DNA from: Macrostomum lignano
Lineage: Eukaryota
Length of the DNA stretch: 64,000 nt
Direction of reading: 5' to 3'
Assembly (NCBI GenBank): GCA_002269645.1
Contig: NIVC01001482.1
Location: 186,001-250,000 of the forward strand
The notes under the pieces: generated by a model
What the model was told of the DNA's origin: nothing
What the model saw: the letters and a program-made list of their open reading frames with translations, nothing else
The model's database searches: none
Position numbers and translations under genes: made by a program
Shown: in pieces, positions 20,525-44,864 of the stretch
Layout of the letters: the number at the start of each line of letters is the position of its first letter
Numbering within the stretch: position 1 is the stretch's first letter

Positions 20525-20557
<33 letters not shown>

Positions 20558-22854
20558 ACTGTCTGTCTGTCTGTCTGACTGTCTGTCTGTCTGTCTGTCT
20601 GTCTGCCTGTTTGTCTGTCTGTCTGCCTGTCTGTCTGTCTGACTGTCTGTCTGTCTGTCTGTCTGCCTGTTTGTCTGTCTGTCTGTCTGCCTGTCTGTCT
20701 ATCTGTCTGTCTGTCTGCCTGACACTCCCTGTCCATTGTCCTGAACCCGTGCCCACTCTGTCTCCCCGCCCTCGCAGCTGGTTCGGTGTAGAGAAGGACT
20801 ACAACGTGCTGGTGATGGACCTGCTGGGCCCCAGCCTGGAGGACCTGTTCAGCTTCTGCTCTCGCCGGTTCACTATGAAGACCGTGCTGATGCTGGCCGA
20901 CCAGATGATCAACCGCATCGAGTACGTGCACAACAAGAACTTCATTCACCGCGACATCAAGCCGGACAACTTCCTCATGGGAATCGGGCGTCACTGCAAC
21001 AAGGTGAGTCTGAGGGTGCAAATAATCCCATTCCCCAGCTTAATTATCCCCAATCCTTAACCAAAAATCCCAATCCCCAACCCAATAATCCAAATCCCCA
21101 ACCCAATAATCCAAATCCCCAACCCAATAATCTAAATCCCCAACCCAATTATCCAAATCCCCAACACAATAATCCAAATCCCCAAACCCAATAATCCAAA
21201 TCCCCAACCCAATTATCCAAATCCCCAACCCAATAACCCAAATCCCCAACACAATAATCCAAATCCCCAAACCCAATAATCCAAATCCCCAACCCAATTA
21301 TCCAAATCCCCAACCCAATAACCCAAATCCCCAACACAATAATCCAAACCCCCAACCCTATAATCCAAATCCCCAACCCAAGTATCCAAATCCTCAACCC
21401 AATAACCCAAATCCCCAATGCAATAATCCAAGTCCTTAACCCAATAATCCAAATCCCAAACCCAATAACCCAAATCCCTAACGCAATAATCCAAGTCCCA
21501 ACCCAATAACCCAAATCCCCAACACAATAATCCAAACCCCCAACCCTATAATCCAAGTCCTTAACCCAATAATCCAAATCCCAAACCCAATAACCCAAAT
21601 CCCCAATGCAATAATCCAAGTCCTTAACCCAATAATCCAAATCCCAAACCCAATAACCCAAATCCCCAACGCAATAATCCAAGTCCCAACCCAATAATCC
21701 GAATTCCTTATTCCCATTGAAGAATCTGAATTCCTTAACTAAGAAATCCTATAAATCGATTTCCGCCCCGCCCGCGCCAGGTGTTCATCATTGACTTCGG
21801 ATTGGCTAAAAAGTTTCGCGATAGTCGTTCCGGAAAGCACATCCCTTACCGGTGAGCATATGATTAGTCATCAAGAGATCTGTTATCTAAAAATGATTAA
21901 TGAATTAGTCTGGTATAAAATGTCCCGAACTCAATTCCCGCAGCGAGGACAAGAACCTCACTGGCACGGCCCGCTACGCTTCAATCAATGCTCACCTGGG
22001 CATCGAACAGTCCAGACGCGATGACATGGAAGCGCTTGGCTACGTGCTGATGTACTTTAATAGGGGCTCGCTACCGTGGCAGGGACTGCAGGTGAAATCC
22101 TTTCCGGCTTTGTTTCATTCATCTACGTTGCTTCATATTCACCGATTATTGCTCATCTCCATTGCTCATAGTTTCGTAAATCTAAGGCTTCATAGTTTCA
22201 TATTCATTACTCTTTTTACTCATAGCTTTTATCTATGGTCATGGCTAGAAAACCCATGGTCATAGCTTATAGATCTATGATCATAGCTCATAAATGTATG
22301 GTCAAAGCTCATAGATCTATGGTCATAGTTTATTAATCCATGATCATTGGTCATAAATCCATGGTCATTGGTCATAAATCCATGGTCATTGGTCATAAAT
22401 CCATGGTCATAGCTCATAGATCTATGGTCATAGTTCATTAATCCATGATCATTGGTAATAAATCATAGCTCATAAATCCCGGCTCATAGCTTATGTCTCA
22501 CAGTTCATCACTATATACTATCTTAATTCCCAATCCCAAAGCCTCAATTCCCATAACTCCCAACCGCAGGCCAACACCAAGAAGCAGAAGTACCAGAAGA
22601 TCAGCGAGAAGAAGATGTCAACGCCAGTCGAGTCCCTGTGCAAAGGCTTCCCGGCCGAGTTCACCATGTACTTGAACTATTGCCGCGGCCTTCGATTCGA
22701 GGAGGCTCCCGACTATATGTACCTCAGACAGCTCTTCCGGATCCTGTTCCGCACTCTCAATCACCAGTTCGACTACACCTTTGACTGGACTCTGCTCAAA
22801 CAGCGGAGCAGCGCAGCCGCCACCGCCGCCTCCGCTTCGGGCGCCGCTCAGTGA
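15686..22854 (+). CDS. CSNK1A1: Casein kinase I alpha (about 318 aa, 6 coding exons)
   Basis: Exons 15686-15805, 20141-20247, 20778-21003, 21781-21851, 21944-22091, 22570-22854, all GT-AG with consistent phases. Motifs [100 protein letters not shown]. Confidence 0.97.
16600..16877. mobile_element. hAT-type MITE, copy 2 (28S-like fragment at about 16728-16791), in CK1 intron
   Basis: TIRs CATGCATGCGCAAC and (reverse complement) CATACATGTGCAAC; perfect 8-bp TSD TTCCCATA at 16592-16599 and 16878-16885; colinear with 297-582. Confidence 0.9.
17476..18806 (-). mobile_element. Full-length mariner (DD34D) transposon in CK1 intron
   Basis: About 31-bp TIRs CGA(A/G)GGGTGCGCAAAAAGT(T/C)TTGGCAACTGG, TA target duplications on both sides, 1331 bp long. 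Confidence 0.96.
17550..18617 (-). pseudogene. Mariner transposase (355 codons) with two in-frame TGA stops and no frameshift
   Basis: [16 protein letters not shown]...; [21 protein letters not shown] and [10 protein letters not shown] with 34-residue D-D spacing; stops at 18453-18455 and 18186-18188. Confidence 0.93.
20275..20720. repeat. (TGTC)n microsatellite in CK1 intron
   Basis: Direct inspection. Confidence 0.97.
21025..21700. repeat. CCCAA(T/C)-rich minisatellite in CK1 intron
   Basis: Units such as CCCAATAATCCAAATCCCCAA. Confidence 0.93.
22240..22500. repeat. Degenerate ~20-bp repeat in CK1 intron
   Basis: ATCCATGGTCATTGGTCATAA-like units. Confidence 0.85.
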
Positions 22855-26718: not shown

Positions 26719-29700
26719 ATGGAAAATTTGATTCAACTGTTAGTCCGCGGCTTCAAAGGCAACATCATGACTATAGATATTCACAAGGTGAGCTTGCTAG
26801 GCTCTACATGTACTTTTATACTGTTTTTGTCCTTCAGCTGGACCCCTCCTCTCCTTCAGCTGGACCCCCCTCTCCTTCAGCTGGACCCCTTCTCCTTCAG
26901 CTGGACCCCCTCTCCTTCAGCTGGACCCCTCCTCTCCTTCAGCTGGACCCCCCTCTCCTTCAGCTGGACCCCCTCTCCTTCAGCTGGACCCCTCCTCTCC
27001 TTCAGCTGGACCCCCCTCTCCTTCAGCTGGACCCCCTCTCCTTCAGCTGGACCCCCTCTCCTTCAGCTGGACCCTCTCCTTCAGCTGGACCCTCTCCTTC
27101 AGCTGGACCCTCTCACCTTCAGCTGGACCCCCTCTCCTTCAGCTGGACCCCCTCCTCTCCTTCAGCTGGACCCCCTCCTCTCCTTCAGCTGGACCCCCTC
27201 TCCTTCAGCTGAACCCCCTCCTCTCCTTCAGCTGGACCCTCTCACCTTCAGCTGGACCCCCTCTCCTTCAGCTGGACCCCCTCCTCTCCTTCAGCTGGAC
27301 CCCCTCCTCTCCTTCAGCTGGACCCCCTCCTCTCCTTCAGCTGGACCCCCTCTCCTTCAGCTGAACCCCCTCCTCTCCTTCAGCTGGACCCTCTCACCTT
27401 CAGCTGGACCCCCTCTCCTTCAGCTGGACCCCCTCCTCTCCTTCAGCTGGACCCCCTCCTCTCCTTCAGCTGGACCCCCTCTCTTTCAGCTGGACCCCCT
27501 CCTCTCCTTCAGCTGGACCCCCTCCTCTCCTTCAGCTGGACCCCCTCCTCTCCTTCAGCTGGACCCCCTCCTCTCCTTCAGCTGGACCCCCTCTCCTTCA
27601 GCTGGACCCCCTCTCCTTCAGCTGGACCCCCTCCTCTCCTTCAGCTGGACCCCCTCCTCTCCTTCAGCTGGACCCCTCCTCTCCTTCAGCTGGACCCCCT
27701 CTCCTTCAGCTGGACCCCCTCTCCTTCAGCTGGACCCCCTCCTCTCCTTCAGCTGGACCCCCTCCTCTCTTTCAGCTGTAACCCCGTCCTGGCATATTTT
27801 CTAATAAATGAGTACAAGTCGAAATACAAAAGTGCTCAAATCGTTCAATATTCATGATTTAAATTTTAAGCACGCAACATTGGCGAATGGCGCCCCCACA
27901 AGACACCCAACATTGGCGCCCCTAAGGATTGCGGCCCCCCCCCCCCCAAAACAAAATCCTGAGTACGCCACTGCGTCCTGCTACATTCATTTCGATCCAA
28001 TACCGGTACCGCCGGTACGATACATTCCACACCCACCGCGCCGCTCTTGCGCAGGATGCCCAGATCAAGGATCTGTTTCGCAAGCTGGAGGATAAGACAG
28101 GACTCAAGCCGGGTGCCTACCAGATGGTCTACACGAGCAAGACTATCGACTTTGAGCAGCACAAGGACAAGCACCTGACCGAGTTTCACCTGGAGAATCA
28201 CTCCAATCTCTGCATGGTGCTGCGTCTGCACGGCGGATCCAAGGTAAGTTCACTCCGAAGCGAGAGCACTCTCCGACGCCACGTGCCAAAGGGAGAACCC
28301 GGTGGAAGAATCCCGGTGGCAGAATCCCGGTAGGAGAATCCCGTTGGCAGAATCCCTGTGAGAGAATCCCTGTGAAAGAATCCCGGTGGGAGAATCCGGG
28401 TGAAATAATCCCGGTGGGGGAATCCCGGTGGAAGAATCCGGGTGAAATAATCCCGGTGAAATAATCCCGGTGAAAGACTCCCGGTAGGAGAATCCGGGTG
28501 AAAGAATCCCGGTGGGGGAATCCCGGTGGAAGAATCCGGGTGAAATAATCCCGGTGAAATAATCCCGGTGAAAGACTCCCGGTAGGAGAATCCGGGTGAA
28601 AGAATCCCGGTGGGGGAATCCCGGTGGAAGAATCCGGGTGAAATAATCCCGGTGGGGGAATCCCGGTTGAAGAATCCGGGTGAAATAACCCCGGTGGGGG
28701 AATCCCGGTGGGTGAATCCCGGTGGGGGAATCCCGGTGGGTGAATCCCGGTGGCCGAATCCCGGTGGAAGAATCCTGTTGAGAGAAGGTAGAAAAGTTCT
28801 AGCCAGAGAATCTCACGGACCGGGAAAAATTTTGTGCTTACAGGAGCTGGACGACTGCGTTGAGCTCACCGACCTGCCGGACATGATCACCTGGGACGAT
28901 GACAAGGACGGCAAGCGGGCGAAGATGCCCTGCGGCCACGCCATCGGCCCGGACAGCCTCACCAGCTATTGCCACAGTCTGCTGGATACGGGGCGCTACC
29001 GGTTCCTCTGCCCCTGGGTGGACCCCGCCAACGCGGGCGTCGGCTGCCCCGCCGAGTGGGACTTCGTGATCGTGCGACGGCTGGCCGTGCTCACCGACGC
29101 TGAGAAGCGCGAGTTTGAGCGCAAAATCTCTGAGAACTACCTGCGACGGGCGGTCAATATTCAGGTAAGTATTGGCAGAGAAACGCTAGGCCTATAAGGT
29201 ACAAAAACACACAGACAGACAACCAGACACCCAGAAATCCAAATGGACACTAAGACACCCAAATGGACATTAAGACACCCAAATGGACACTAAGACACCC
29301 AGATGGACGCTAAGACATCCAAATGGACACTAAGACACCCAAATGGACCCTAAGACACCCAAATGGACACTAAGACATCCAAATGGACACCAAGACACCC
29401 AAATGGACACTAAGACATCCAAATGGACACTAAGCCATCCAAATGGACACTAAGACACCCAAATGGACACTAAGACATCCAAATGGACACTAAGACACCC
29501 AGATGGACACTAAGCCATCCAAATGGACACTAAGACATCCAAATGGACACTAAGACACCCAGATGGACACTAAGACATCCAAATGGACACTAAGACATCC
29601 AAATGGACACTAAGACACCCAAATGGACACTAAGACACCCACCCAAATGGACACCAAGACACCCAAATGGACACTAAGACACCCAGATGGACACTAAGAC

Positions 29701-31947
29701 ATCCAAATGGACACTAAGACATCCAAATGGACACTAAGACACCCAAATGGACACTAAGACACCCACCCAAATGGACACCAAGACACCCAAATGGACACTA
29801 AGACATCCAAATGGACACTAAGCCATCCAAATGGACACTAAGACACCCAAATGGACACTAAGACATCCAAATGGACACTAAGACACCCAGATGGACACTA
29901 AGCCATCCAAATGGACACTAAGACATCCAAATGGACACTAAGACACCCAGATGGACACTAAGACATCCAAATGGACACTAAGACATCCAAATGGACACTA
30001 AGACACCCAGATGGACACTAAGACATCCAAATGGACACTAAGACACCCAGATGGACACTAAGACATCCAAATGGACACTAAGACATCCAAATGGACACTA
30101 AGACACCCAGATGGACACTAAGACATCCAAATGGACACTAAGACACCCAGATGGACACTAAGACATCCAAATGGACACTAAGACACCCAAATGGACCCTA
30201 AGACACCCAAATGGACACTAAGACATCCAAATGGACACCAAGACACCCAAATGGACACTAAGACATCCAAATGGACACTAAGCCATCCAAATGGACACTA
30301 AGACACCCAAATGGACACTAAGACATCCAAATGGACACTAAGACACCCAGATGGACACTAAGCCATCCAAATGGACACTAAGACATCCAAATGGACACTA
30401 AGACACCCAGATGGACACTAAGACATTCAAATGGACACTAAGACATCCAAATGGACACTAAGACACCCAAATGGACACTAAGACACCCACCCAAATGGAC
30501 ACCAAGACACCCAAATGGACACTAAGACATCCAAATGGACACTAAGCCATCCAAATGGACACTAAGACACCCAAATGGACACTAAGACACCCAGATGGAC
30601 ACTAAGACATCCAAATGGACACTAAGACACCCAGATGGACACTAAGACATCCAAATGGACACTAAGACATCCAAATGGACACTAAGACACCCAGATGGAC
30701 ACTAAGACATCCAAATGGACACTAAGACACCCAGATGGACACTAAGACATCCAAATGGACACTAAGACACCCAGATGGACACTAAGACATCCAAATGGAC
30801 ACTAAGACATCCAAATAGATGGGCACTAAGGCATTCAGACAGATGGACACTGAGACACCCAGAAAGACAGATGGACACTGAGACACCCAGAAAGACAGAT
30901 GGACACTGAGACACCCAGAAAGACAGATGGACACTGAGACACCCAGAAAGACAGATGGACACTGAGACACCCAGAAAGACAGATGGACACTGAGACACCC
31001 AGAAAGACAGATGGACACTGAGACACCCAGAAAGACAGATGGACACTGAGACACCCAGAAAGACAGATGGACACTGAGACACCCAGAAAGACAGATGGAC
31101 ACTGAGACACCCAGAAAGACAGATGGACACTGAGACACCCAGAAAGACAGATGGACACTGAGACACCCAGAAAGACAGATGGACACTGAGACACCCAGAA
31201 AGACAGATGGACACTGAGACACCCAGAAAGACAGATGGACACTGAGACACCCAGAAAGACAGATGGACACTGAGACACCCAGAAAGACAGATGGACACTG
31301 AGACACCCAGAAAGACAGATGGACACCCGGACAGACAGATAGCCACTAACACATTCAGACTCGCTCTCAACCCCGCAGGAGTGCCCAGGCTGCAGGTCGT
31401 TCTGCCAGCGCCGCAGCGCTCGCGATCGCAGAATGATCTGTCCGGTGTGCTCGGAGCCGGACAAGGGGCGGCTGTTCGAGTTCTGCTGGTACTGCTTGAA
31501 CAAGTGGCGCACCCCGGGAACGACCAAGTGCGGCAACGACATCTGCTCGGGCAAGGACCCTCGGATCGCCATTCTGGCCGCGGCGAAGGTCAAGACGATC
31601 GTCGGCGTGCCCGGTAGGTCACCGAGGCAATTAGCAATTCTTTATAAACCTAAACCTGTGCCATTCGAAATTCTCATGGAATAACAACAGACTCGTTAAA
31701 GTAGCGTTAAAGTGCAATTTTTATAACCATAATCTCGTCTCCAGACGTGCCCGGCCGCCGCGCCTGCATCAAGTGCGGCATGATCATTGAGCACGTGACC
31801 GCCTGCAAGCACATGAAGTGCGTCTGCGACCAAGAGTTCTGCTTCATCTGCTTGAAGCCGAAGAACGACAGGGGCAACTGGCAGTGCGGCAGCTACAGGG
31901 AGCCGTGCGCTGTGGCGCCGAGGCAAACCGAGGTGCCCGGGGAGTGA
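26719..31947 (+). CDS. Ubiquitin-like domain + RBR (RING1-IBR-RING2) E3 ligase, paralog 1 (about 338 aa)
   Basis: Exons 26719-26787, 28055-28243, 28844-29164, 31379-31613, 31745-31947 splice in frame. Ubl MENLIQLLVRGFKGNIMTIDIHK..VLRLHGG; partial RING1 MPCGHAI..FLCP; IBR ECPGC..CPVC..FCWYC; RING2 CIKCG..ACKHMKCVCDQEFCFIC. AATAAA at 31983. Confidence 0.9.
26830..27785. repeat. 19-22 bp minisatellite in RBR1 intron 1
   Basis: Unit CCTTCAGCTGGACCCC(CTC)TCT. Confidence 0.95.
27800..27972 (-). mobile_element. One terminus of a CAGTGGCGTA-type MITE adjoining the minisatellite
   Basis: Minus strand reads CAGTGGCGTACTCAGGATTTT...poly-G, the same architecture as the ends at 1221 and 61474; the other terminus was not found. 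Confidence 0.55.
28295..28780. repeat. ATCCCGGTG-based minisatellite in RBR1 intron 2
   Basis: Repeated GAATCCCGGTG / AATCCGGGTG units. Confidence 0.92.
29205..31335. repeat. Compound minisatellite in RBR1 intron 3: 20-bp units switching to related 28-bp units near 30840
   Basis: AAATGGACACTAAGACA(C/T)CC, then AGATGGACACTGAGACACCCAGAAAGAC. Confidence 0.96.
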
Positions 31948-32014
31948 GGCGCATCTCTGCTGGCGTGACTGATGCGGCGGAGAATAAAGACTTTGAGATG
32001 GAACACTTGATGGA

Positions 32015-35000
32015 GCTGGTGATGGGAGATCTGTATGAGATTGAGGATCTGTGGGAGATGGGAGCTGAGATTGGGGATCTGTGGGAGATGGGGGCTGAGA
32101 TTGGGGATCTGTGGGAGATGGGAGCTGAGATTGGGGAACTGTGGGAGATGGGGGCTGAGATTGGGGATCTGTGGGAGATGGGGGCTGAGATTGGGGATCT
32201 GTGGGAGATGGGAGTTGAGATTGGGGATCTGTGGGAGATGGGGGCTGAGATTGGGGAACTGTGGGAGATGGGGGCTGAGATTGGAGATCTGTGGGAGATG
32301 GGGGCTGAGATTGGGGATCTGTGGGAGATGGGAGTTGAGATTGGGGATCTGTGGGAGATGGGGGCTGAGATTGGGGATCTGTGGGAGATGGGAGCTGAGA
32401 TTGGGGATCTGTGGGAGATGGGGGCTGAGATTGGGGATCTGTGGGAGATGGGGGCTGAGATTGGGGATCTGTGGGAGATGGGGGCTGAGATTGGGGATCT
32501 GTGGGAGATGGGGGCTGAGATTGGGGATCTGTGGGAGATGGGAGCTGAGATTGGGGATCTGTGGGAGATGGGGGCTGAGATTGGGGATCTGTGGGAGATG
32601 GGGGCTGAGATTGGGGATCTGTGGGAGATGGGGGCTGAGATTGGGGATCTGTGGGAGATGGGGGCTGAGATTGGAGATCTGTGGGAAATGGGAGCTGAGA
32701 TTGGGGATCTGTGGGAGATGGGGGCTGAGATTGGGGATCTGTGGGAGATGGGAGCTGAGATTGGGGATCTGTGGGAGATGGGAGCTGAGATTGGGGATCT
32801 GTGGGAGATGGGAGCTGAGATTGGGGATCTGTGGGAGATGGGGGCTGAGATTGGGGATCTGTGGGAGATGGGGGCTAGGATTGGGGATCTGTGGGAGATG
32901 GGGGCTGAGATTGGGGATCTGTGGGAGATGGGGGCTGAGATTGGGGATCTGTGGGAGATGGGAGCTGAGATTGGGGATCTGTGGGAGATGGGGGCTGAGA
33001 TTGGGGATCTGTGGGAGATGGGGGCTGAGATTGGGGATCTGTGGGAGATGGGGGCTGAGATTGGGGATCTGTGGGAGATGGGAGCTGAGATTGGGGATCT
33101 GTGGGAGATGGGGGCTGAGATTGGGGATCTGTGGGAGATGGGGGCTAGGATTGGGGATCTGTGGGAGATGGGGGCTGAGATTGGGGATCTGTGGGAGATG
33201 GGAGCTGAGATTGGGGAACTGTGGGAGATGGGGGCTGAGATTGGGGATCTGTGGGAGATGGGGGCTGAGATTGGGGATCTGTGGGAGATGGGGGCTGAGA
33301 TTGGGGATCTGTGGGAGATGGGAGTTGAGATTGGGGATCTGTGGGAGATGGGGGCTGAGATTGGGGATCTGTGGGAGATGGGAGCTGAGATTGGGGATCT
33401 GTGGGAGATGGGGGCTGAGATTGGGGATCTGTGGGAGATGGGGGCTGAGATTGGGGATCTGTGGGAGATGGGGGCTGAGATTGGGGATCTGTGGGAGATG
33501 GGGGCTGAGATTGGGGATCTGTGGGAGATGGGGGCTGAGATTGGGGATCTGTGGGAGATGGGGGCTGAGATTGGGGATCTGTGGGAGATGGGAGCTGAGA
33601 TTGGGGATCTGTGGGAGATGGGGGCTGAGATTGGGGATCTGTGGGAGATGGGGGCTGAGATTGGGGATCTGTGAAAGATGGGGGCTGAGATTGGGGATCT
33701 GTGGGAGATGGGGGCTGAGATTGGGGATCTGTGGGAGATGGGGGCTGAGATTGGGGATCTGTGGGAGATGGGGGCTGAGATTGGGGATCTGTGGGAGATG
33801 GGGGCTGAGATTGGGGATCTGTGGGAGATGGGGGCTGAGATTGGGGATCTGTGGGAGATGGGGGCTGAGATTGGGGATCTGTGGGAGATGGGGGCTGAGA
33901 TTGGGGATCTGTGGGAGATGGGAGCTGAGATTGGGGATCTGTGGGAGATGGGGGCTGAGATTGGGGATCTGTGGGAGATGGGGGCTGAGATTGGGGATCT
34001 GTGGGAGATGGGGGCTGAGATTGGGGATCTGTGGGAGATGAGGGCTGAGATTGGGGATCTGTGGGAGATGAGGGCTGAGATTGGGGATCTGTGGGAGATG
34101 GGAGCTGAGATTGGGGATCTGTGGGAGATGGGGGCTGAGATTGGGGATCTGTGGGAGATGGGGGCTGAGATTGGGGATCTGTGGGAGATGGGAGCTGAGA
34201 TTGGGGATCTGTGGGAGATGGGGGCTGAGATTGGGGATCTGTGGGAGATGGGGGCTGAGATTGGGGATCTGTGGGAGATGGGGGCTGAGATTGGGGATCT
34301 GTGGGAGATGGGAGCTGAGATTGGGGATCTGTGGGAGATGGGGGCTGAGATTGGGGATCTGTGGGAGATGGGGGCTGAGATTGGGGATCTGTGGGAGATG
34401 GGGGCTGAGATTGGGGATCTGTGGGAGATGGGGGCTGAGATTGGGGATCTGTGGGAGATGGGGGCTGAGATTGGGGATCTGTGGGAGATGGGGGCTGAGA
34501 TTGGGGATCTGTGGGAGATGGGGGCTGAGATTGGGGATCTGTGGGAGATGGGGGCTGAGATTGGGGATCTGTGGGAGATGGGGGCTAGGATTGGAGATCT
34601 GTGGGAAATGGGAGCTGAGATTGGGGATCTGTGGGAGATGGGGGCTGAGATTGGGGATCTGTGGGAGATGGGAGCTGAGATTGGGGATCTGTGGGAGATG
34701 GGGGCTGAGATTGGGGATCTGTGGGAGATGGGAGTTGAGATTGGGGATCTGTGGGAGATGGGGGCTGAGATTGGGGATCTGTGGGAGATGGGAGCTGAGA
34801 TTGGGGATCTGTGGGAGATGGGGGCTGAGATTGGGGATCTGTGGGAGATGGGGGCTAGGATTGGGGATCTGTGGGAGATGGGGGCTGAGATTGGGGATCT
34901 GTGGGAGATGGGGGCTGAGATTGGGGATCTGTGGGAGATGGGAGCTGAGATTGGGGATCTGTGGGAGATGGGGGCTGAGATTGGGGATCTGTGGGAGATG

Positions 35001-35790
35001 GGGGCTGAGATTGGGGATCTGTGGGAGATGGGGGCTGAGATTGGAGATCTGTGGGAAATGGGAGCTGAGATTGGGGATCTGTGGGAGATGGGGGCTGAGA
35101 TTGGGGATCTGTGGGAGATGGGAGCTGAGATTGGGGATCTGTGGGAGATGGGGGCTGAGATTGGGGATCTGTGGGAGATGGGAGCTGAGATTGGGGAACT
35201 GTGGGAGATGGGGGCTGAGATTGGGGATCTGTGGGAGATGGGGGCTGAGATTGGGGATCTGTGGGAGATGGGGGCTGAGATTGGGGATCTGTGGGAGATG
35301 AGGGCTGAGATTGGGGATCTGTGGGAGATGGGGGCTGAGATTGGGGATCTGTGGGAGATGGGGGCTGAGATTGGAGATCTGTGGGAGATGGGGGCTGAGA
35401 TTGGGGATCTGTGGGAGATGGGGGCTGAGATTGGGGATCTGTGGGAGATGGGGGCTGAGATTGGGGATCTGTGGGAGATGGGGGCTGAGATTGGGGATCT
35501 GTGGGAGATGGGAGCTGAGATTGGGGATCTGTGGGAGATGGGGGCTGAGATTGGGGATCTGTGGGAGATGGGGGCTGAGATTGGGGATCTGTGGGAGATG
35601 GGGGCTGAGATTGGGGATCTGTGGGAGATGGGGGCTGAGATTGGGGATCTGTGGGAGATGGGGCTGAGATTGGGGATCTGTGGGAGATGGGGGCTGAGAT
35701 TGGGGATCTGTGGGAGATGGGGGCTGAGATTGGGGATCTGTGGGAGATGGGGGCTGAGATTGGGGATCTGTGGGAGATGGGGGCTGGTGA
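32015..35790. repeat. 30-bp G-rich minisatellite, about 125 copies
   Basis: Unit GAGATTGGGGATCTGTGGGAGATGGGGGCT, beginning just after the RBR1 polyA signal. Confidence 0.98.
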
Positions 35791-36585
35791 TGGCAAATCA
35801 TCGAGTAAATTTTTTTTCAGTAAAAATCACCCAAGTAAAAATCAATATATATATATATTTTTTATTAGTTTTGAAGTGTTACGGTTGTACATGTGTGACC
35901 CGTGTGTTTTTAATTTTTTAGTTGACTGTTTGATGTGACTTTAAGTAATTGCATCTGCTCGTACTTGCGTATTTGAATTTTACTATTTATATTCCGGTGC
36001 ATCAAGAGACAAAGCGATAAATAAATTAAACTGTAACCGTCTTTAATTCCATTAAAATTCGCGTTTTAGTTCGAGTCGAAATTTGCTCTCAAAAAGGAAA
36101 CTTTGAGTTAGTCATTTTTTCAAATCATCTGTTAAGCAGAACTGGTCGCGGTTAGTACGCAGTTGATATGCTTATATTTAAGGTGGGTTGCTCAGTGGTC
36201 CCGGGTTCGATTCGTTGTGACCCCACTGCAGCGGAGGGCAGCAGATCTGAACTGCGATAGAAATTCAGGGAAAGAGAGCTGCGTTGCCCCACATCGCCAG
36301 TGCTGTACAATCGTTGTACCTACATCCGTGATTGTAGTGGCTCTTAAAGTGTACATCCTAGCTTGTTGTGTTTGAGCTATGGAGCTACGAACAGTCTTAT
36401 TTGATAATGGAATGTACATTAGCAGTAGCAGACAGATGGTACCTAGTAACAGGCCAGAAAACTGTGCAAAGAAAGGCATTTATACCGAGAAAGCTAGGAC
36501 CCAGGCTTTTAGTTGAGTCAAACTGGCAATCTGAGTTAATACATGTAAGTTTTCCTTTGACTTGTACTTGATAAGCTTGGTAAAA

Positions 36586-39500
36586 ATGGATAATTTATTA
36601 CAGATTTTCGTGAAGGATTTCAACAGCCGCACAGAGACAGTTAGCATTCTCAAGGTAAGAATGATAAGCACCTACCATTGTTTGTACTTACCTATATGAG
36701 GAAAACAATTAGGACCAGAGCTAGTGAGCAGTTTCAGTTCACAGGCAAACCCCGTTCTAACAAAGGATTATCCGTGCTCTCTTAGTCTAACATATCCAGT
36801 GCCAACCCCGTAACGATGTGAAAGAAAAATGAAGCAATGCACTCTCCACGACCTAGGATGCTCAGATCAAGGATCTGTTTCGCAAGCTGGAGGACAAGAC
36901 GGGACTCGAACCTGGCACCTACCAGATGGTCTACGCGAGCAAGACTATCGACTTTGAACAGCACAAAGACAAGCATCTGTCCGACTTTCACTTGGAGAAT
37001 CACGCCAATCTCCACATGGTGCTGCGTCTACCAGGTGGCTCAAGACTGAGAGTGAGTAATACCTGTACCTGTTCATCACAGAATTTGGTATCGCTTCTGA
37101 ACTTCTTAAATTCCGATATTTGCACGCAACTATAATTCTGTGTCAAGGAGCTGGGCGACTGCGTTGAGCTCACCGAGGAGCCGGACATGATCACCTGGGA
37201 CGACGACAAAGACAACTTGCGAGTCAAAATGCCCTGCGGCCACGCCATCGGACCGGACAGCCTCACCATGTACTGTCGCAGCCTGCTGGACTCCGGCCTC
37301 TACCGCTTCCTCTGCCCCTGGCTGGACCCGAACGATTCCAGAGTTGGCTGCCCCGTCGAATGGGACTTCGTCGTTATACGACGGCTGGCCGTGCTTAGCG
37401 ACGAGGAGAGGCAAGAGTTTGAACGAAAGATTTCCGAGAACTACTTGCGACGGGCGGTGAATATTCAGGTACAAGCGTAAGAAACGTTCGATTACAAGAA
37501 ACTTAATACTTTATAGAAATGCAAGATTGTCAGCTGACAGATATCCCGTGACGCCGCAAACGTTAACAGCGTGTTTTCTGTTGCAACTGGCAGCTTTAAA
37601 AGTGATTCATTTCCGAACGGTTCCTCACACAGGAGTGCCCGAGCTGTCACTCCTACTGCAAGCGCGTCAGCTCGCGCGATCGTCGCGTGGTCTGCCCCGC
37701 CTGTTCCAGCGGAGGCAGGCAGCGTTTCGAGTTCTGCTGGTACTGCTTGAACAAGTGGCGCAGTGCTGGCACGGACAAGTGCGGCAATGACATCTGCTCC
37801 GGCAAGGACCCTCGGATCGCCATTCTGGCCGCGGCGCCGGTCAAAGAGATTGTCGGCGTGAAGGGTCAGTTGGCCTGCAGGGGGGATGCACTTGTATGAC
37901 GTAGTACGGCGTATGGCGCGGATGCTTAGTTCATTTTCAGGGGCTTTGACTACGCAGGCAGCCAGCGAGTAGGCAAGTAGTCGTTCACATTCTGCTCACC
38001 AAAGTGTACAGCTGCCATGACTTTCTCATTATCAGAAATTCTGTACACTCTGTGCCTTAGGGATTGGCCCTCATAGTTGAGGAACGCACGGCCAAGTCTT
38101 AGACCAATTTTTTGTGCACGAGCCCCAAATTAACAGTAGAACTTAAGGAGGGAGGACTTTTCACCGTCGGGGCGTCGGGGTGATGACGGAATGCTTGAGA
38201 GACCAGCTGAGGATGTCCTGCAGTTTAGGCTTGCCCACTGTCGAGGATCCAGAAGCTCCGCCTGCGTGAAGGCCAGTGACCAACGAAGTCAGAGCTGATG
38301 CAGACGCATGTGGTTGACGTCCTGATGAAATCTGGAGGTGTATCAAGGCCGCTCTGAGGCGCAGTGCTGATTGGCACACACGGTGTGTATTGAACTCACT
38401 AGCGCTTTTACGACGCTAGAAAAAATCTGACCTTCTGGCAAAATCGTTGAATATCTCGACGGTCTGGAGGGCTGGCGACTTGATTCTTGTTTGAGAAGGT
38501 TTACAACAGAAAGTTAGCCCGTGCTCATAAATTTCGTGTGCCTGCGTGGTTCCCTTACGGCGCAGCAAAAAATTGTCAGGGGATTCCCCCCTTGGTAGTT
38601 CGACGGGCGGAAGAAATGGCTTGTTGGCTTGTTAATGAGGCCGCGCTCAAAATCGAACCCAGGGTGTTTGGTGGGAGAATCGAGGGCGTTAACCGCTGAG
38701 CTGCTCTGCCAAAGAATACGCCCGCAGACACTACGTAATATTCGTCTTCAGACCGTGTTAGACTGTGTTAGATCAATTAACCCTGAGTCCAAAATCCCGA
38801 CATGAAGCATAAAGCCAAGTTTCGAAATCGAACGACTTCGAACCACTGGTCCCCCTTCTCGACTTGAGGCAAACCCTCTGCTGTAGGGAGACAAGCATTA
38901 AAGCTAAGGGAGGTGGCATTAAATACATGGTATATATTCCCCATTTATTTTGTTGTCTAGCGGGCAAAAGCAAGAGGTGTCTCGTTTATTGACCGAGGCG
39001 AAGCCGAGGTCAATGATCGAGACACCGAGTGCTTTTGGCCCTAGACAGCTAAATGAGTGGGGAATATGATATGTATCCCCCGTTCGTTGTCTATGGTTGT
39101 TGTCTCGAATTTATCAGCCCGCGGGGCAGCGGGAAATAAATGATTTATTCACCTAGGGAAATAAATGAAAACATGCGTCACATAGACACTCGCCCGGGGC
39201 AAAAGGGGGATACATGTATGAAGCGGCTCGCGTGGGGCGAGATGAAGACCGCTTGTCCTTTAATAATGTGCTGCGGCTGGGCCTTTTACGGCTCGAGTTT
39301 ATTTGGGCCATAGACAGTTTGAGCAGCAGTGGCTGGCTCTGTCAAAAGTACATGTGTCCACTACACAACCCCCCAGAGCCAGACAATGTTGCTCTTGCAT
39401 TGTGCTCGCTGGGAGCTCAGCTGCTGTGGTAAACGGCTGGGTCAGCTGCGATTACTTTGCCACTGGAAGCGATGGAACGCAATGGAAGCGACTGGGTTAG

Positions 39501-40507
39501 AAAAGGGTCACCGGCAGTGGATGACCGGGTTTCCACTGCCGGTGACCCTTTGGCGGGTGTTCAGGGACGGTTCAAAAGTGTGAGCACTTTGCTGCTGATA
39601 GATCGAGCTGCGGGCCGGTGGCGTTGTGGACCAGTTGAGGTCATAGGCACCAGCATCCTTGAGGCCGAGGGCAGCGGCAGCAGTGGATGGTTGTGCTGAT
39701 GATGATGCTGCTGGTACGTATGCCATTGTGGTGATCCGTCGGTAGCGTGGTGGGGCCTGCAGCGCAGAAAAGTGCACCGATGCTTCGTCCGACGTGTCCG
39801 CCTGTGCTGCTGGGACAAGGCGTTGCTGAGGTGAGCCGCATCGACGTCGCAGCGTCGGGTGGGGCGTTGCAAGCAAACTCTGGCAGGCGAGAGCCCCTTA
39901 CCCGGAGTGCACTGCTCACCTATTGCATAACCGCAGTGACCAGGAATCAGTCATGGTCACTTTGATGCGGCTCCAGTCAGAACCGCTGAGCCGGATGCAG
40001 GGATCGAGGTGGCCGATGGCTTTGGCTGGACTCGGAAGACCTGGTGGCCGAAACTGTGACGAGGCAGCGGGCGAAAAGCTTGAAATACTCAGCTACGGCT
40101 GATTATGTCGGGCTCACCACTGAAGAGGCTCGCGTGCGGCGAGATGAAGACCGCTTGTCCTTTAATAAAGTGCTGCGGCTCGGGCCTTTTACGGCTCTAG
40201 TTTATTTGGGCGATAGACAGTTTGAGCAGCAGTGGCTGGCTCTGTCAAAAGTACATGTGTCCACTACATGTAGTAATGTGTTATCCCCAAAATCACGCAT
40301 CCAGACGTGCCCGGTCGCCGCGCCTGCATCCACTGCGGCATGATCATCGAGCACGTTCGTTTTTGCAAGCACATGAAGTGCATCTGCGGCCAAGAGTTCT
40401 GCTTTATCTGCTTAAAGCCGAAGAACAGCGAGGGCAACTGGCAGTGCGGCAGCTTCAACGCCCCGTGTACAATTGCTCCAAGGCAAACTCAGGTGCCCGG
40501 AGAATGA
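36586..40507 (+). CDS. Ubiquitin-like domain + RBR E3 ligase, paralog 2 (about 339 aa)
   Basis: Exons 36586-36654, 36857-37051, 37148-37468, 37633-37864, 40305-40507 with the same intron positions as paralog 1. Ubl MDNLLQIFVKDFNSRTETVSILK..VLRLPGG; RING2 FCKHMKC. AATAAA near 40526. Confidence 0.9.
38923..39218. mobile_element. Palindromic non-autonomous element (long hairpin plus second inverted pair)
   Basis: Imperfect hairpin 38923-39076 centred on CCGAGGCGAAGCCGAGG, then ATGTATCCCCC...GGGGGATACAT; family not determined. Confidence 0.6.
39219..40268 (-). mobile_element. Miniature non-autonomous LTR retroelement (TRIM-like) in RBR2 intron 4
   Basis: Direct repeats 39219-39365 and 40121-40268 (about 147 bp, TG...CA); 4-bp TSD TGTA; on the minus strand a PBS TGGTGAGCCCGACATAAT next to the 5' LTR and a poly-G PPT before the 3' LTR. 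Confidence 0.85.
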
Positions 40508-42767: not shown

Positions 42768-44784
42768 TTATCTCTTGCGCTTTCTAGTTCCCTGTCCGGA
42801 TTTAGCAGGAGGCCTTTCAGCTTCGAGCTTCTTCGATTCAACCTCGCCATCAGCGGCGGCGTCGGCAGGTGTCTCAGTCGATAATGACGCCGGCTTGACC
42901 TCATCAACAATGGCGGGCGACTTCAAATGCTGGAATCTGGCCAAGTCTGCAGCGAACAAGACGGTGTGCGCCCAGCCGGCGTGCGGCTGCCACAGGCTGG
43001 GGAAGAAGTCGCTAATTGATTGATAGGCCGACTCGGTCAGGCTCTTTGTGGAGGCTGGTAGGCCGTACAGGCTGCGAGCGATTCGCATCACGTGCACATC
43101 CACTGGCACCAGGTGCAGCTGGTCCAGCGACATCAGGCAGACGCAATCGGCCACTTTACGGCCAACCCCGGTGAATTCTTTGGTGAGGCAGCGTCGGATC
43201 TCGTCTGGCTGCGCCGAGCCGCGCAGGCTGTGCAGCCAATCGGCGCCGCCCAGGTCGAGCAGCCGCCTGGCGCTCTCGACTACAAATTTGGCGCGATAGC
43301 CGAAGCCCAACTCGCGGAGGCGCGGTTCCGCCTCTGGTGAGCACAGGGCCGACAGCTGCAGAGCGGCGGGGCGAGGCGCGAGGCATGCAACAGTGGAGCT
43401 GTTGGGGTGGTGGGTGCTGCTGCCCTGGATTCCTGCGACTGATGATGGGGTGGTGGGTGCTGTTGCCCTGGATTCCTGCGACTGATGATGGGGTGGTGGG
43501 TGCTGCTGCCCTGGATTCCCGCGACTGATGATGGGGTGGTGGGTGCTGCTGCCCTGGATTCCTGCGACTGATGATGGGGTGGTGGGTGCTGTTGCCCTGG
43601 ATTCCTGCGACTGATGATGGGGTGGTGGGTGCTGCTGCCCTGGATTCCCGCGACTGATGATGGGGTGGTGGGTGCTGCTGCCCTGGATTCCTGCGACTGA
43701 TGATGGGGTGGTGGGTGCTGCTGCCCTGGATTCCTAGGGCTGATAGGGTAGGCTATAACCTCCTAGATTCCCGGTGCTCACCTGGGGAAAGCCGTGGTAC
43801 TCGCGGCCGTCAACAATGCAAATTTGCTGGCCAAAATGTTTGCACAATTTCTCAACCAGCTGACTAATCCGGGCAATATTGTTGTTAGACGAGCAGATGA
43901 AGCTGAATAAATTCTCCAGCGGTTGCTGACGTAACAGGCGCACGCGGACGTCAGGGAACTGGCTGCATACTGAGCGGAACACCGGGTCCGAAGCGCTCCA
44001 ACCAGCGTACAGGCTCTCCAGGGTGGGACCGTTCAATCGGAGATAGTCCTCCAGCACCTGCTGGTCCGAGGCGGCGCTGGTGGATGGCGGATAGACCTGC
44101 GGATAGTAGGGGACAGGCGAATGCTGAGAATATGGGAGTCAGGGTGTGACTGTTTGATCAGGCTGGAGATCTGGGATTCCGCTAGCCGATGACTGGGGAT
44201 CTGGGATCTCAGGATTTTTTATCTTAGGATCTGAAATCTCAGTATCCGGAAACTCCGGATCTTTGATCTCAGGATCTCTGTTTGATCTCAGGAACTGGAA
44301 TCGCGGGATCTGGGATCTCAGGATCTGGAATCTCACGATGAGATGGGATCTCACGATCTGGGATCTCACGATTTTTGATCTTAGGATCTCGAATCTCAGG
44401 ATCTGGGACCTCAGGATCTGGGATCTCGGGATCTGGGATCTCGGATCTGGAAACCCAGGATCTGAAAGCTCAGGATCTGGAATCTCAGGATCTGGTATCT
44501 CAGGTTGCAACGAAAGATAAAATAGTCACTATCACATCACGACACACCTGAAACTCGATGCACGCCTCATTGGGCCGCCGCAGAAGCCACACCTTATCGG
44601 CGTGAACCCCGGCCCAGTAGCCGTCCTGTTCCAGCTGGCGCCAGCGGAAGCTCTGCCCGCAGGCCAGAGTGACGCCAAGGTTCAGCTCGGAAGCCGGACA
44701 GGAGAGCGAGTGCCAGGCGTTGCCCGAGCTGGCAAAAACCTTCGGCGCAGCATCTGCCGCCGCCTTTTTCAGCTTTCTCAACAT
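42768..44784 (-). CDS. OGG1: 8-oxoguanine DNA glycosylase/AP lyase (about 379 aa, 3 exons)
   Basis: Exons 44784-44548, 44096-43782, 43355-42768. Motifs ELNLGVTLACGQSFRW, LLRQQPLENLFSFICSSNNNIARI, LGFGYRAK, HhH-GPD FTGVGRKVADCVCLMSLD..VPVDVH, AGWAHTVLF; C-terminal NLS-like RKRKR. Confidence 0.96.
43390..43738. repeat. 43-bp minisatellite in OGG1 intron 2
   Basis: Unit GATGATGGGGTGGTGGGTGCTG(C/T)TGCCCTGGATTCC(T/C)GCGACT. Confidence 0.95.
44150..44505. repeat. Degenerate GGATCT-based repeat in OGG1 intron 1
   Basis: Repeated CTCAGGATCTGG-like units. Confidence 0.85.
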
Positions 44785-44864
44785 GCATTGGATTGATATG
44801 AGTCAGTGATAACACAGATACAACAATCGTAGTAATAATTCATCAATTTTTAGACGCATTTCAG

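What the first reader, a model, noticed from the sequence alone, without database searches (positions are those of the whole stretch)
26719..40507. Tandem Ubl-RBR ligases whose Ubl retains a di-glycine end: possible modifier-plus-ligase fusion system
Seen: both paralogs begin with a full beta-grasp Ubl ending VLRLHGG-SK or VLRLPGG-SRLR (ubiquitin is VLRLRGG), directly before RING1-IBR-RING2 with an intact catalytic CKHMKC motif. The Ubl N-termini differ strongly between paralogs while the RBR part is conserved. Established: ubiquitin and Ubl precursors are cleaved after GG by DUBs, and the Parkin Ubl lacks GG. Inference: cleavage could release a conjugatable lineage-specific Ubl plus a de-repressed E3, giving a self-contained modification module. 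Alternatively the GG is vestigial and the Ubl is autoinhibitory or proteasome-targeting.
Basis: partly seen in the sequence, partly recalled or inferred. Interest (0 to 1): 0.75.

Follow-up and report, generated by a model that had tools for sequence, protein, structure and literature searches.

The report
Ubiquitin-fused RBR ligase gene pair
Two neighbouring flatworm genes each encode a ubiquitin-like domain that keeps ubiquitin's cleavable Gly-Gly tail, fused to an RBR-type ubiquitin ligase; they belong to an ancient, widespread, unstudied family in which that tail is almost never lost, so the domain is probably cut off, though this is unproven.

Summary
Window 26719-31947 and 36586-40507 (+ strand) carry two five-exon paralogues (338 and 339 aa, 77% identical) from Macrostomum lignano. 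Each has a ubiquitin-fold domain ending LRLHGG-S or LRLPGG-S, a short flexible linker, and a RING1-like/IBR/RING2 module with the catalytic Cys.

- The residue after GG is small in 80% of members and never Pro.
- The linker beyond it varies freely, from 7 to about 190 residues.

- The Ubl is not lineage-specific. The family runs from ciliates, amoebae and fungi to cnidarians, molluscs, hemichordates and amphioxus.
- Vertebrate orthologues (zebrafish si:ch211-212k18.15) lack the Ubl and start where the invertebrate linker starts.
- "RING1" keeps only one of the two zinc sites.

My best reading is a ubiquitin-fusion-type precursor cut after GG (confidence about 0.5). Cleavage, and any conjugation of the released Ubl, remain untested. 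I found no paper on the family.

The parts
26719..26787 (+). par1 exon 1: Met plus the beta1-beta2 hairpin of the Ubl (MENLIQLLVRGFKGNIMTIDIHK)
   Evidence: It matches NCBI model P0001. This exon is the divergent one: 58% nucleotide identity to par2 exon 1.
28055..28243 (+). par1 exon 2: the rest of the Ubl, ending LRLHGG-SK. The Gly-Gly codons are 28232-28237.
   Evidence: The exon ends two codons after GG.
28844..29164 (+). par1 exon 3: linker, the PDMITWDDD motif, the single-zinc RING1-like domain (C116, H118, C142, C154) and the RING1-IBR helix
31379..31613 (+). par1 exon 4: IBR domain (C195, C198, C214, C217; C229, C232, C244, C249)
31745..31947 (+). par1 exon 5: RING2/Rcat with catalytic Cys292 (31804-31806) and His294, the conserved C-terminal tail APxQTxxPG, and the stop codon
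36586..36654 (+). par2 exon 1: Met plus the beta1-beta2 hairpin of the Ubl (MDNLLQIFVKDFNSRTETVSILK)
   Evidence: It matches P0003.
36857..37051 (+). par2 exon 2: the rest of the Ubl, ending LRLPGG-SRLR. The Gly-Gly codons are 37034-37039.
   Evidence: The Leu, Gly, Gly and Ser codons differ synonymously from par1.
37148..37468 (+). par2 exon 3: linker plus the RING1-like domain and helix
37633..37864 (+). par2 exon 4: IBR domain
40305..40507 (+). par2 exon 5: RING2/Rcat with catalytic Cys293 (40364-40366), and the stop codon

Best explanation
Shown:
- The window holds two tandem, intact paralogues from Macrostomum lignano, both under purifying selection.
- They belong to an ancient, uncharacterised RBR-type E3 family, named in databases 'DDB_G0292642-like', 'ARIH1/2-like' or si:ch211-212k18.15.
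- Each protein is a ubiquitin-derived beta-grasp domain that keeps the Arg72-Leu73-x-Gly75-Gly76 tail, then a small residue (Ser), then a flexible linker of unconstrained length.
- The linker leads into a catalytic module: a half-RING (zinc site II only), an IBR, and an Ariadne-like Rcat with the catalytic Cys and His.

Inferred mechanism:
1. The protein is made as a ubiquitin-fusion-type precursor, like UBA52, RPS27A or FAU.
2. A cellular deubiquitinase, probably of the USP or UCH type, cuts after Gly-Gly.
3. Cleavage yields a free Ubl with an exposed Gly-Gly and an RBR ligase whose N-terminus matches that of the Ubl-less vertebrate orthologues.
4. The ligase then works by the usual RBR route. 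An E2~Ub (or E2~Ubl) binds the RING1-like domain, the modifier passes to Cys292 as a thioester, and from there to a substrate.

Whether the freed Ubl is itself activated and conjugated, and whether its own ligase does so, is the most speculative step.
For: - Gene models and expression. dN/dS between the paralogues is 0.13-0.34 in every exon.
- Ubl identity: end-to-end alignment to ubiquitin; about 1.2-1.7 A to ubiquitin.
- Tail conservation: G83 and G84 are at least 90% conserved in a 40-sequence alignment spanning flatworms, hemichordates, amphioxus, cnidarians, molluscs, an annelid and Glomeromycota. GG is present in 126 of 128 complete Ubls and Arg72 in 121 of 128. R72 and L73 are 95% conserved, R42 84% and K48 86%, while R74 is free.
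- Within the window, the Leu73, Gly75, Gly76 and P1' Ser codons differ synonymously between the paralogues while the x residue changes (H versus P).
- P1' is small (S, A, G, T, V, M, C) in 104 of 130 members, against 22-28% at P2'-P10'. Pro is 0 of 130 at P1' against a 10.7% background.
- The linker varies from 7 to about 190 residues, including low-complexity expansions.
- AF2 gives pLDDT below 50 only at residues 82-85 (HGGS). pTM is 0.49 with the Ubl and 0.72 without it, so the Ubl is not docked.
- In the di-Ubl members, only the distal N-terminal Ubl keeps GG, and it abuts the next beta-grasp directly, as in polyubiquitin. The RBR-proximal Ubl has lost GG. These members are the ciliate Stylonychia P0199, eukprot/MetaClust protein P0232 (organism not given), and ENA proteins P0130 and P0180.
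- More than 100 vertebrate orthologues lack the Ubl and begin M-x(3-10)-EKxYDP..., the position of the invertebrate linker.
- Some vertebrate gene models fuse a USP-type deubiquitinase domain to this RBR: skate P0326 and elephant shrew P0169.
- RBR identity: Pfam IBR hits, an ARIH1/2 RING2 hit at E 2e-7, and Foldseek alignments of 226-250 columns to ARIH2, HHARI, Parkin, RNF216, HOIL-1 and HOIP.
Against: - There is no direct evidence of cleavage; everything rests on sequence conservation.
- The sequences are phylogenetically related, so the binomial p-values overstate significance.
- Divergent relatives keep a fused N-terminal region at the Ubl position that lacks GG: bivalve paralogues P0145 and P0202 (no ubiquitin-family Pfam hit), unnamed sequences of unknown organism P0152 and P0187, and the proximal Ubl of ciliates. 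This shows an N-terminal module can be kept uncleaved in cis.
- In several members the Ubl is internal, behind N-terminal extensions of 150-300 residues (P0081, P0115, P0251, P0104). That is unusual for a modifier precursor, though some of these may be chimeric gene models.
- In Macrostomum the Ubl is only 26-34% identical to ubiquitin and has lost the Arg42 equivalent (Gln). This weakens the case for activation by a ubiquitin E1.
- The commonest residue at the R74 position is Pro, which may hinder some deubiquitinases.
Confidence: 0.5

Rival explanations
1. The Ubl is a permanent, uncleaved regulatory domain, as in Parkin or HOIL-1. It either docks on the RBR core (autoinhibition or allosteric activation) or recruits partners or the proteasome. 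The LRLxGG tail is kept because it is read in cis, for example by lying in the donor-ubiquitin tail groove next to the Rcat cysteine as a pseudo-donor.
For: - Parkin is the top whole-protein structural match.
- Relatives with a GG-less fused N-terminal region at the Ubl position exist.
- The Ubl is internal in some members.
- The hydrophobic-patch positions (8, 44, 68, 70) stay hydrophobic.
- Loss of the Ubl in vertebrates is also compatible with loss of a regulatory domain.
Against: - Known integral Ubls (Parkin, HOIL-1) have lost GG (established knowledge).
- A cis-binding tail does not explain why P1' must be small and never Pro while the linker beyond it is free in sequence and length.
- In di-Ubl members the RBR-proximal Ubl has lost GG and the distal one keeps it. 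This is the opposite of what a tail that must reach the RBR would predict.
- AF2 shows no confident Ubl-RBR docking, and the tail is disordered.
Confidence: 0.3
2. The Ubl is cleaved but is not a modifier. It acts only as a co-translational folding or expression aid for a cysteine-rich zinc protein, as proposed for ubiquitin in the ribosomal-protein fusions. It is then degraded or idle.
For: - All the evidence for cleavage listed above applies here too.
- The Ubl evolves faster than the RBR. Five of the 8 differences between the window and the reference par1 fall in the 84-residue Ubl, and exon 1 is only 39% identical between the paralogues.
- The Arg42 equivalent is lost in Macrostomum.
- Vertebrates manage without the Ubl.
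Against: A pure chaperone would need only the fold and the cleavage site. Yet the K48, R42, V70 and S65 equivalents are 83-87% conserved family-wide, which suggests that partners read the Ubl surface.
Confidence: 0.25
3. The uncleaved N-terminal Ubl acts as a ubiquitin-fusion-degradation (UFD) type degron that keeps the ligase short-lived through ubiquitylation of the K48/K29 equivalents.
For: The K48 equivalent is 86% conserved, and K29 and K48 are present in both paralogues.
Against: A degron does not need Gly-Gly or a small P1'. UFD substrates are typically made experimentally by destroying the GG site (established knowledge).
Confidence: 0.07
4. The ligase charges itself. The Rcat Cys-His attacks its own Gly84-Ser85 bond like a cysteine protease, forms a Ubl~Cys292 thioester without E1 or E2, and passes the Ubl to a target in a single turnover. 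This is conceptually like the ciliate Ubl-BIL (BUBL) autoprocessing proteins.
For: All support is indirect. RING1 has lost zinc site I, so E2 binding is not assured. The GG tail and catalytic Cys are both nearly invariant. The linker is flexible.
Against: - No RBR is known to cleave peptide bonds.
- Ubl-less vertebrate orthologues keep the same half-RING1 and Rcat, so the module works without a fused Ubl.
- Linkers as short as 7 residues may not reach the Rcat.
Confidence: 0.03

Closest known systems
Parkin (Ubl-RING0-RBR E3)
   Same: An N-terminal ubiquitin-fold domain followed by RING1-IBR-Rcat with a Cys/His active site. It is the best whole-chain structural match. The Ser65 equivalent is conserved in the family (83%; par1 Ser, par2 Ala).
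   Different: The Parkin Ubl has no Gly-Gly and is not cleaved. Parkin has a RING0 domain and REP element and a canonical two-zinc RING1. Here there is no RING0, RING1 has one zinc site, and the Ubl keeps LRLxGG.
Ariadne subfamily (ARIH1/HHARI, ARIH2)
   Same: The closest Rcat by sequence (E 2e-7) and the top RBR-only structural matches.
   Different: There is no Ariadne autoinhibitory domain and no UBA-like or acidic N-terminus. The protein ends 12 residues after the last Rcat cysteine, with its own conserved APxQTxIPG tail. RING1 is degenerate.
Ubiquitin and Ubl fusion precursors (UBA52, RPS27A, FAU/FUBI-eS30, polyubiquitin)
   Same: An N-terminal ubiquitin-fold module ending in Gly-Gly, joined by a peptide bond to an unrelated protein, with a non-Pro P1'. 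Di-Ubl members join head to tail like polyubiquitin.
   Different: The partner is an E3 ligase rather than a ribosomal protein. A variable linker follows GG. The Ubl is a diverged paralogue of ubiquitin (26-59% identity). Processing is not demonstrated.
HOIL-1/RBCK1 (Ubl-NZF-RBR)
   Same: A Ubl followed by an RBR, with a full-length structural alignment of the RBR.
   Different: The HOIL-1 Ubl lacks GG and serves to bind HOIP. HOIL-1 has an NZF domain and a canonical RING1.
Ciliate BUBL proteins (Ubl fused to an intein-like autoprocessing domain)
   Same: A Ubl with a Gly-Gly end fused upstream of a domain carrying a nucleophilic cysteine. This is a precedent for E1-independent release or activation of a Ubl (recalled from the literature, not tested here).
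   Different: The downstream domain here is an RBR, not a Hint/BIL fold, and the cysteine is about 200 residues from the scissile bond.

Membership tests
RBR (RING1-IBR-RING2/Rcat) E3 ligases | RING1 is a C3HC4 cross-brace RING with eight zinc ligands (two sites) that binds the E2 | tested here: not met
   Only C116, H118, C142 and C154 (site II) are invariant. The first C-x2-C pair is absent family-wide. The positions of Parkin C260 and C263 are occupied by G-P-E-S. The conserved 'YC' cysteine aligns with a Parkin cysteine (C268 by my count) that I recall is not a zinc ligand. Pfam gives no RING hit above threshold, only a weak zf-RING_UBOX hit in 4 of 20 members. The fold still aligns with RING1 of known RBRs.
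RBR (RING1-IBR-RING2/Rcat) E3 ligases | An IBR domain with two zinc sites between the two RING-like domains | tested here: met
   Pfam IBR gives two stretches. C195, C198, C214, C217, C229, C232, C244 and C249 are invariant or nearly invariant.
RBR (RING1-IBR-RING2/Rcat) E3 ligases | An Rcat/RING2 with the catalytic cysteine, and a histidine two residues after it | tested here: met
   C292 is invariant and the motif is C-K-H-M. His is replaced by Gln in a few members. Pfam IBR scores E 4e-9 over residues 274-311, and the ARIH1 RING2 hit is E 2e-7.
RBR (RING1-IBR-RING2/Rcat) E3 ligases | Overall three-domain fold collinear with solved RBRs | tested here: met
   The RBR-only AF2 model has pLDDT 86 and pTM 0.72. 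Foldseek aligns 226-250 columns with ARIH2, HHARI, Parkin, RNF216, HOIL-1 and HOIP at probability 1.0.
RBR (RING1-IBR-RING2/Rcat) E3 ligases | E2-dependent formation of an E3~Ub thioester | not testable with these tools
   This needs biochemistry.
Cleavable ubiquitin/Ubl fusion precursors | A ubiquitin-fold module whose last two residues are Gly-Gly, followed by more polypeptide | tested here: met
   GG is present in 126 of 128 family Ubls.
Cleavable ubiquitin/Ubl fusion precursors | The P1' residue is compatible with deubiquitinase cleavage (not Pro) | tested here: met
   Pro is 0 of 130 at P1' and 1 of 130 at P2', against 8-14% at P3'-P10'. Ser accounts for 51% and Ala for 15% at P1'.
Cleavable ubiquitin/Ubl fusion precursors | Actual endoproteolytic processing after Gly-Gly | not testable with these tools
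   The only indirect support is the flexible tail and the Ubl-less vertebrate orthologues that start at the linker.
Conjugatable ubiquitin-like modifiers | Activation by an E1 and isopeptide attachment to targets through the C-terminal Gly | not testable with these tools
   The E1-contact arginines R42 and R72 are 84% and 95% conserved in the family, but R42 is Gln in both Macrostomum paralogues.
Parkin subfamily | RING0/UPD domain, REP element, and a Ubl without GG | tested here: not met
   Only 14-16 residues separate GG from the PDMITW motif that opens the RING1-like domain, and GG is present.
Ariadne subfamily | A C-terminal Ariadne domain after the Rcat | tested here: not met
   The protein ends at residue 338, 12 residues after C326.

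The most novel reading that the evidence does not exclude
The family encodes a previously unrecognised ubiquitin-like modifier system. A diverged ubiquitin paralogue is synthesised as a precursor fused to its own dedicated RBR ligase, released by cleavage after Gly-Gly, and conjugated to targets. On this reading the system is conserved from ciliates and fungi to hemichordates and amphioxus, and was remodelled in vertebrates, where the Ubl was lost and a USP domain was sometimes gained. The two Macrostomum paralogues, which differ mainly in the beta1-beta2 recognition hairpin, would then provide two distinguishable modifier flavours.
Probability: 0.2. Interest if true: 0.85.

Novelty: new variant of a known kind. 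Interest (0 to 1): 0.6.

Why it matters
All well-studied Ubl-RBR ligases (Parkin, HOIL-1) carry an uncleavable Ubl used for regulation. All well-studied cleavable ubiquitin fusions carry ribosomal proteins or more ubiquitin.

Here a near-invariant cleavage-type tail joins a ubiquitin paralogue to an E3 ligase. The arrangement has persisted across several eukaryotic supergroups (Alveolata, Amoebozoa, fungi, animals). If the Ubl is cleaved, this is a new class of ubiquitin-fusion precursor. It would deliver a Ubl and a ligase in 1:1 amounts, and possibly a new modifier system.

The module also shows that an RBR can work with a RING1 that has lost one zinc site. This bears on how RBRs engage E2s.

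The family survives in fish, amphibians, reptiles, monotremes and some placental mammals, including macaque. It occurs in tandem arrays in tenrec and apparently has no literature, so it is an open and easily testable target. Macrostomum lignano has RNAi and transgenesis, which makes the window's genes a practical entry point.

Tried and rejected
- Literature searches found nothing specific. I searched for DDB_G0292642, ch211-212k18.15, and Ubl/ubiquitin-fusion combined with RBR. The 2009 animal RBR classification (PubMed 19526189) is not held, so I cannot say whether this subfamily was named there.
- A homology search with the Ubl alone (residues 1-86), meant to find stand-alone or poly-Ubl genes, returned 'no candidate shares three words'. 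This is uninformative.
- I suspected from memory that the USP fused to the RBR in elephant shrew was USP18-like. The PDB search puts a related tenrec USP (P0288, similar to the N-terminal half of P0169) closest to USP8, USP47 and USP7, with USP18 far weaker, so I dropped the idea.
- Look-ups of the tenrec and skate USP isoforms for synteny failed because they are not on record. USP-RBR adjacency therefore rests on the fused gene models only.
- The RING1-like region alone gave no significant PDB or Pfam hit.
- I rejected positive selection as the cause of exon-1 divergence. Both dS and dN are raised there (pS 0.73 against about 0.4), which suggests an older or separate history for exon 1, for example gene conversion limited to exons 2-5. 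With only 13 synonymous sites, this is weak.
- A third copy in the window was excluded by tblastn.
- I did not build a phylogeny, so the number of independent GG or Ubl losses is not established.


Full report
**What is in the window**

The window is eukaryotic DNA with GT-AG introns packed with minisatellites. On the + strand I built two five-exon genes with identical exon phases.
- par1: 26719-26787, 28055-28243, 28844-29164, 31379-31613, 31745-31947 (338 aa).
- par2: 36586-36654, 36857-37051, 37148-37468, 37633-37864, 40305-40507 (339 aa).

They are 77% identical. tblastn finds no third copy in the window.

The models agree with the independent NCBI annotation of Macrostomum lignano.
- P0001 (BOX15_Mlig024150g1) has 8 substitutions against par1 and no indels.
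- P0003 (BOX15_Mlig023095g1) has 4 substitutions against par2.
- The reference contig shows the same tandem pair between a protein kinase gene and OGG1.
- A related species yields a 1311-nt RNA-seq contig with one uninterrupted 338-aa ORF, so Ubl and RBR sit on one mRNA.

dN/dS between the paralogues is 0.13-0.34 in every exon, so both are under purifying selection.

**Check of the observation**

Residues 1-84 align end to end with ubiquitin 1-76, including the LRLxGG tail. In the AF2 model they superpose on ubiquitin structures at 1.2-1.7 A. The tails are VLRLHGG-SK in par1 and VLRLPGG-SRLR in par2, and exon 2 ends just after them.

The C-terminal 250 residues are an RBR module.
- Pfam IBR hits two stretches.
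- A profile of this part finds the ARIH1/ARIH2 RING2 best (E 2e-7), then Parkin and RNF216.
- An RBR-only AF2 model (pLDDT 86, pTM 0.72) aligns over 226-250 columns with ARIH2, HHARI, Parkin, RNF216, HOIL-1 and HOIP.
- The catalytic cysteine (C292 in par1, C293 in par2) is invariant. It sits in C-K-H-M-x-C, with the His two residues downstream as in Parkin.

Exon 1 has 9 of 23 identical residues and 58% nucleotide identity. Exon 2 is about 89% identical in protein, and exons 2-5 are 78-85% identical in DNA.

Both pS (0.73) and dN (0.47) are raised in exon 1. This points to a separate or older history for that exon rather than positive selection, although there are only 13 synonymous sites.

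One correction is needed. 'RING1' is not a canonical RING.
- Across the family only C116, H118, C142 and C154 are invariant. These are the site II ligands of a cross-brace RING.
- The first C-x2-C pair is missing.
- A marginal alignment to Parkin puts G-P-E-S where Parkin has the site I ligands C260 and C263.
- The conserved 'YC' cysteine aligns with a Parkin cysteine (C268 by my count) that I recall is not a zinc ligand.
- A conserved acidic segment, PDMITWDDD, sits where zinc site I would be. By analogy with U-boxes, I infer that it replaces that site.

**The family**

The genes are not a flatworm novelty. The full-length search returned 131 homologues:
- hemichordates (Ptychodera, Saccoglossus, Glandiceps)
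- amphioxus
- cnidarians (Actinia, Montipora, Dendronephthya)
- molluscs
- an annelid
- Glomeromycota and Endogonales fungi

A profile of the RBR part found 319 clusters at E<=1e-30 among 1.84 billion representatives. Named members extend the range to a ciliate (Stylonychia), Archamoebae (Pelomyxa), a brachiopod (Lingula) and a sponge (Amphimedon). Database names are placeholders: 'DDB_G0292642-like', 'ARIH1-like', 'RBR-type E3'. I found no paper that mentions the Dictyostelium or zebrafish locus names.

**Is the Gly-Gly conserved?**

- In a 40-sequence alignment across phyla, V78, R80, L81, G83 and G84 are at least 90% conserved.
- Of 128 proteins with a complete family Ubl, 126 end in GG and 121 have Arg at the ubiquitin-72 position.
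- In 83 full-length Ubls aligned to ubiquitin, R72 and L73 are 95% conserved, V70 87%, K48 86%, R42 84% and S65 83%. R74 is free and Pro is the commonest residue there.
- The constraint extends exactly one residue past GG. P1' is S, A, G, T, V, M or C in 104 of 130 members (80%), against 22-28% at P2'-P10'.
- Pro is 0 of 130 at P1' and 1 of 130 at P2', against 8-14% further on. The naive p-value is about 1e-6 and is not corrected for shared ancestry.
- Beyond P1' the linker is free in sequence and ranges from 7 to about 190 residues, including low-complexity expansions in amphioxus and mussels.
- Inside the window, the Leu73, Gly75, Gly76 and Ser codons differ synonymously between the paralogues while the x residue changed.
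- AF2 gives pLDDT below 50 only for residues 82-85. It does not dock the Ubl on the RBR: pTM is 0.49 with the Ubl and 0.72 without.

**Informative relatives**

(i) Di-Ubl members: Stylonychia P0199, P0232, P0130 and P0180. Each has two ubiquitin-family domains. The distal one ends in LRGG or LLGG and abuts the next beta-grasp directly, as in polyubiquitin. The RBR-proximal one has lost GG. This fits a cleavable first unit plus a resident second unit. It argues against a tail that must reach the RBR in cis.

(ii) Vertebrates have the family but without the Ubl. More than 100 orthologues are only 262-300 aa long. They come from sharks, ray-finned fish (zebrafish si:ch211-212k18.15), coelacanth, amphibians, turtles, alligator, platypus, Afrotheria, Xenarthra, macaque and slow loris. 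They begin M-x(3-10)-EKxYDPxDxTLKFV..DEITGDDDP..RAEMSCGH, which is where the invertebrate or fungal linker starts. The mature ligase therefore does not need a fused Ubl. In tenrec the gene forms a tandem array.

(iii) Other N-terminal partners occur. These are a USP-type deubiquitinase domain (skate P0326, from a cluster of 23 sequences, and elephant shrew P0169), a macro domain (P0146), a kinase (Amphimedon P0161) and LRRs. The USP fusion is a weak 'Rosetta stone' link between this ligase and a GG-specific protease. A related tenrec USP (P0288) is closest to USP8, USP47 and USP7, not USP18.

(iv) Counter-examples exist. Bivalve paralogues (Solemya P0145, Mizuhopecten P0202) and unnamed sequences of unknown organism keep a fused N-terminal region at the Ubl position that lacks GG; the bivalve regions have no ubiquitin-family Pfam hit. 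A few members have the Ubl behind long N-terminal extensions.

**Most likely mechanism**

Shown: the architecture, the conservation pattern and the RBR catalytic residues.

Inferred: the protein is a ubiquitin-fusion-type precursor. A USP or UCH-type deubiquitinase cuts after Gly84. This frees a roughly 9.5-kDa Ubl with an exposed Gly-Gly, plus an RBR ligase equivalent to the vertebrate protein. The ligase then takes a modifier from an E2 bound to the half-RING, carries it on Cys292, and passes it to substrates.

My confidence that cleavage occurs is about 0.5. That the freed Ubl is conjugated: about 0.25. That its own ligase does this: about 0.1-0.15.

In Macrostomum the Ubl is more diverged than in other members (26% and 34% identity to ubiquitin, against a family median of 39% and a maximum of 59%). 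It has Gln at the R42 position. This lowers the odds that a ubiquitin E1 accepts it.

**Rivals**
- An integral regulatory Ubl of the Parkin/HOIL-1 kind, with the tail read in cis: 0.3.
- Cleaved, but only a folding aid and not a modifier: 0.25, as a sub-case of cleavage.
- A UFD-type degron: 0.07.
- Self-charging by the Rcat cysteine: 0.03.

**Comparison with known systems**

The protein works most like a hybrid of two known things. One is the Ubl-RBR ligases (Parkin, HOIL-1). The other is the cleavable ubiquitin fusions (UBA52, RPS27A, FAU).

It is a member of the RBR superfamily by IBR, Rcat and fold, but it fails the canonical RING1 criterion. It is not Parkin (no RING0, and GG is present). 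It is not Ariadne (no Ariadne domain). I rate it a new variant of a known kind.

**Limits**
- There is no biochemical evidence.
- The conservation statistics ignore phylogeny.
- I did not build a rooted tree.
- AF2 coordinates and PAE were not available for measuring the tail-to-Cys distance.
- The key 2009 review of animal RBR subfamilies could not be read.

Noticed in passing
window 32036-35786: A 3.75-kb array of a 30-nt minisatellite (125 copies, 96% matches, GC skew about +0.75) fills the spacer between the two paralogues. The reference M. lignano contig has only about 0.87 kb of it. Introns 1-3 of par1 are likewise filled with 14-43-nt minisatellites (26830-27778, 28291-28786, 29233-31326), which explains why par1 is 5.2 kb here and 3.0 kb in the reference.
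   Followed up: partly
window 38934-40120 (par2 intron 4): About 1.2 kb is present in the window but absent from the reference contig NIVC01000845.1. It carries one copy (39219-39365) of a roughly 150-nt direct repeat whose second copy (40121-40268) lies just upstream of exon 5. This is an insertion or duplication polymorphism of unknown nature.
   Followed up: partly
window 26719-26787 versus the reference protein P0001: Five of the 8 amino-acid differences between the window's par1 and the reference allele or homeologue fall in the 84-residue Ubl (positions 8, 16, 17, 50, 76). Two of these are hydrophobic-patch equivalents (L8 and H68 of ubiquitin). The Ubl surface appears to be the fast-evolving part of the gene.
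   Followed up: partly
window 17553-18185 (-): An open frame with mariner/Tc1-type transposase motifs (...[12 protein letters not shown]..., ...[13 protein letters not shown]). It is a probable transposon remnant.
   Followed up: no
window 20527-22851 (+): Exons of a casein-kinase-1-like protein kinase ([10 protein letters not shown]; [13 protein letters not shown]...). This is the upstream neighbour and matches the Pkinase gene on the reference contig. Its introns also hold minisatellites.
   Followed up: partly
window 42771-44802 (-): Exons of an 8-oxoguanine DNA glycosylase (OGG1; OGG_N and HhH-GPD on the reference contig). This is the downstream neighbour on the opposite strand. One exon-sized frame runs through a 43-nt tandem repeat (43403-43735).
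   Followed up: partly
relatives: P0146, P0326, P0169, L003/L004: The same RBR core is fused to a macro (ADP-ribose-binding) domain in an unnamed transcript family and to USP deubiquitinase domains in skate and elephant shrew. It forms a tandem array with about 10-kb spacing in tenrec. This pattern is reminiscent of fast-evolving, possibly immunity-related gene families.
   Followed up: partly
window 50895-51968 (-) and 55604-56380 (-): Long open frames encoding coiled-coil-like, Glu/Leu/Lys-rich sequence, probably exons of another gene. A strong GC-skew block at 54-56 kb suggests another minisatellite.
   Followed up: no
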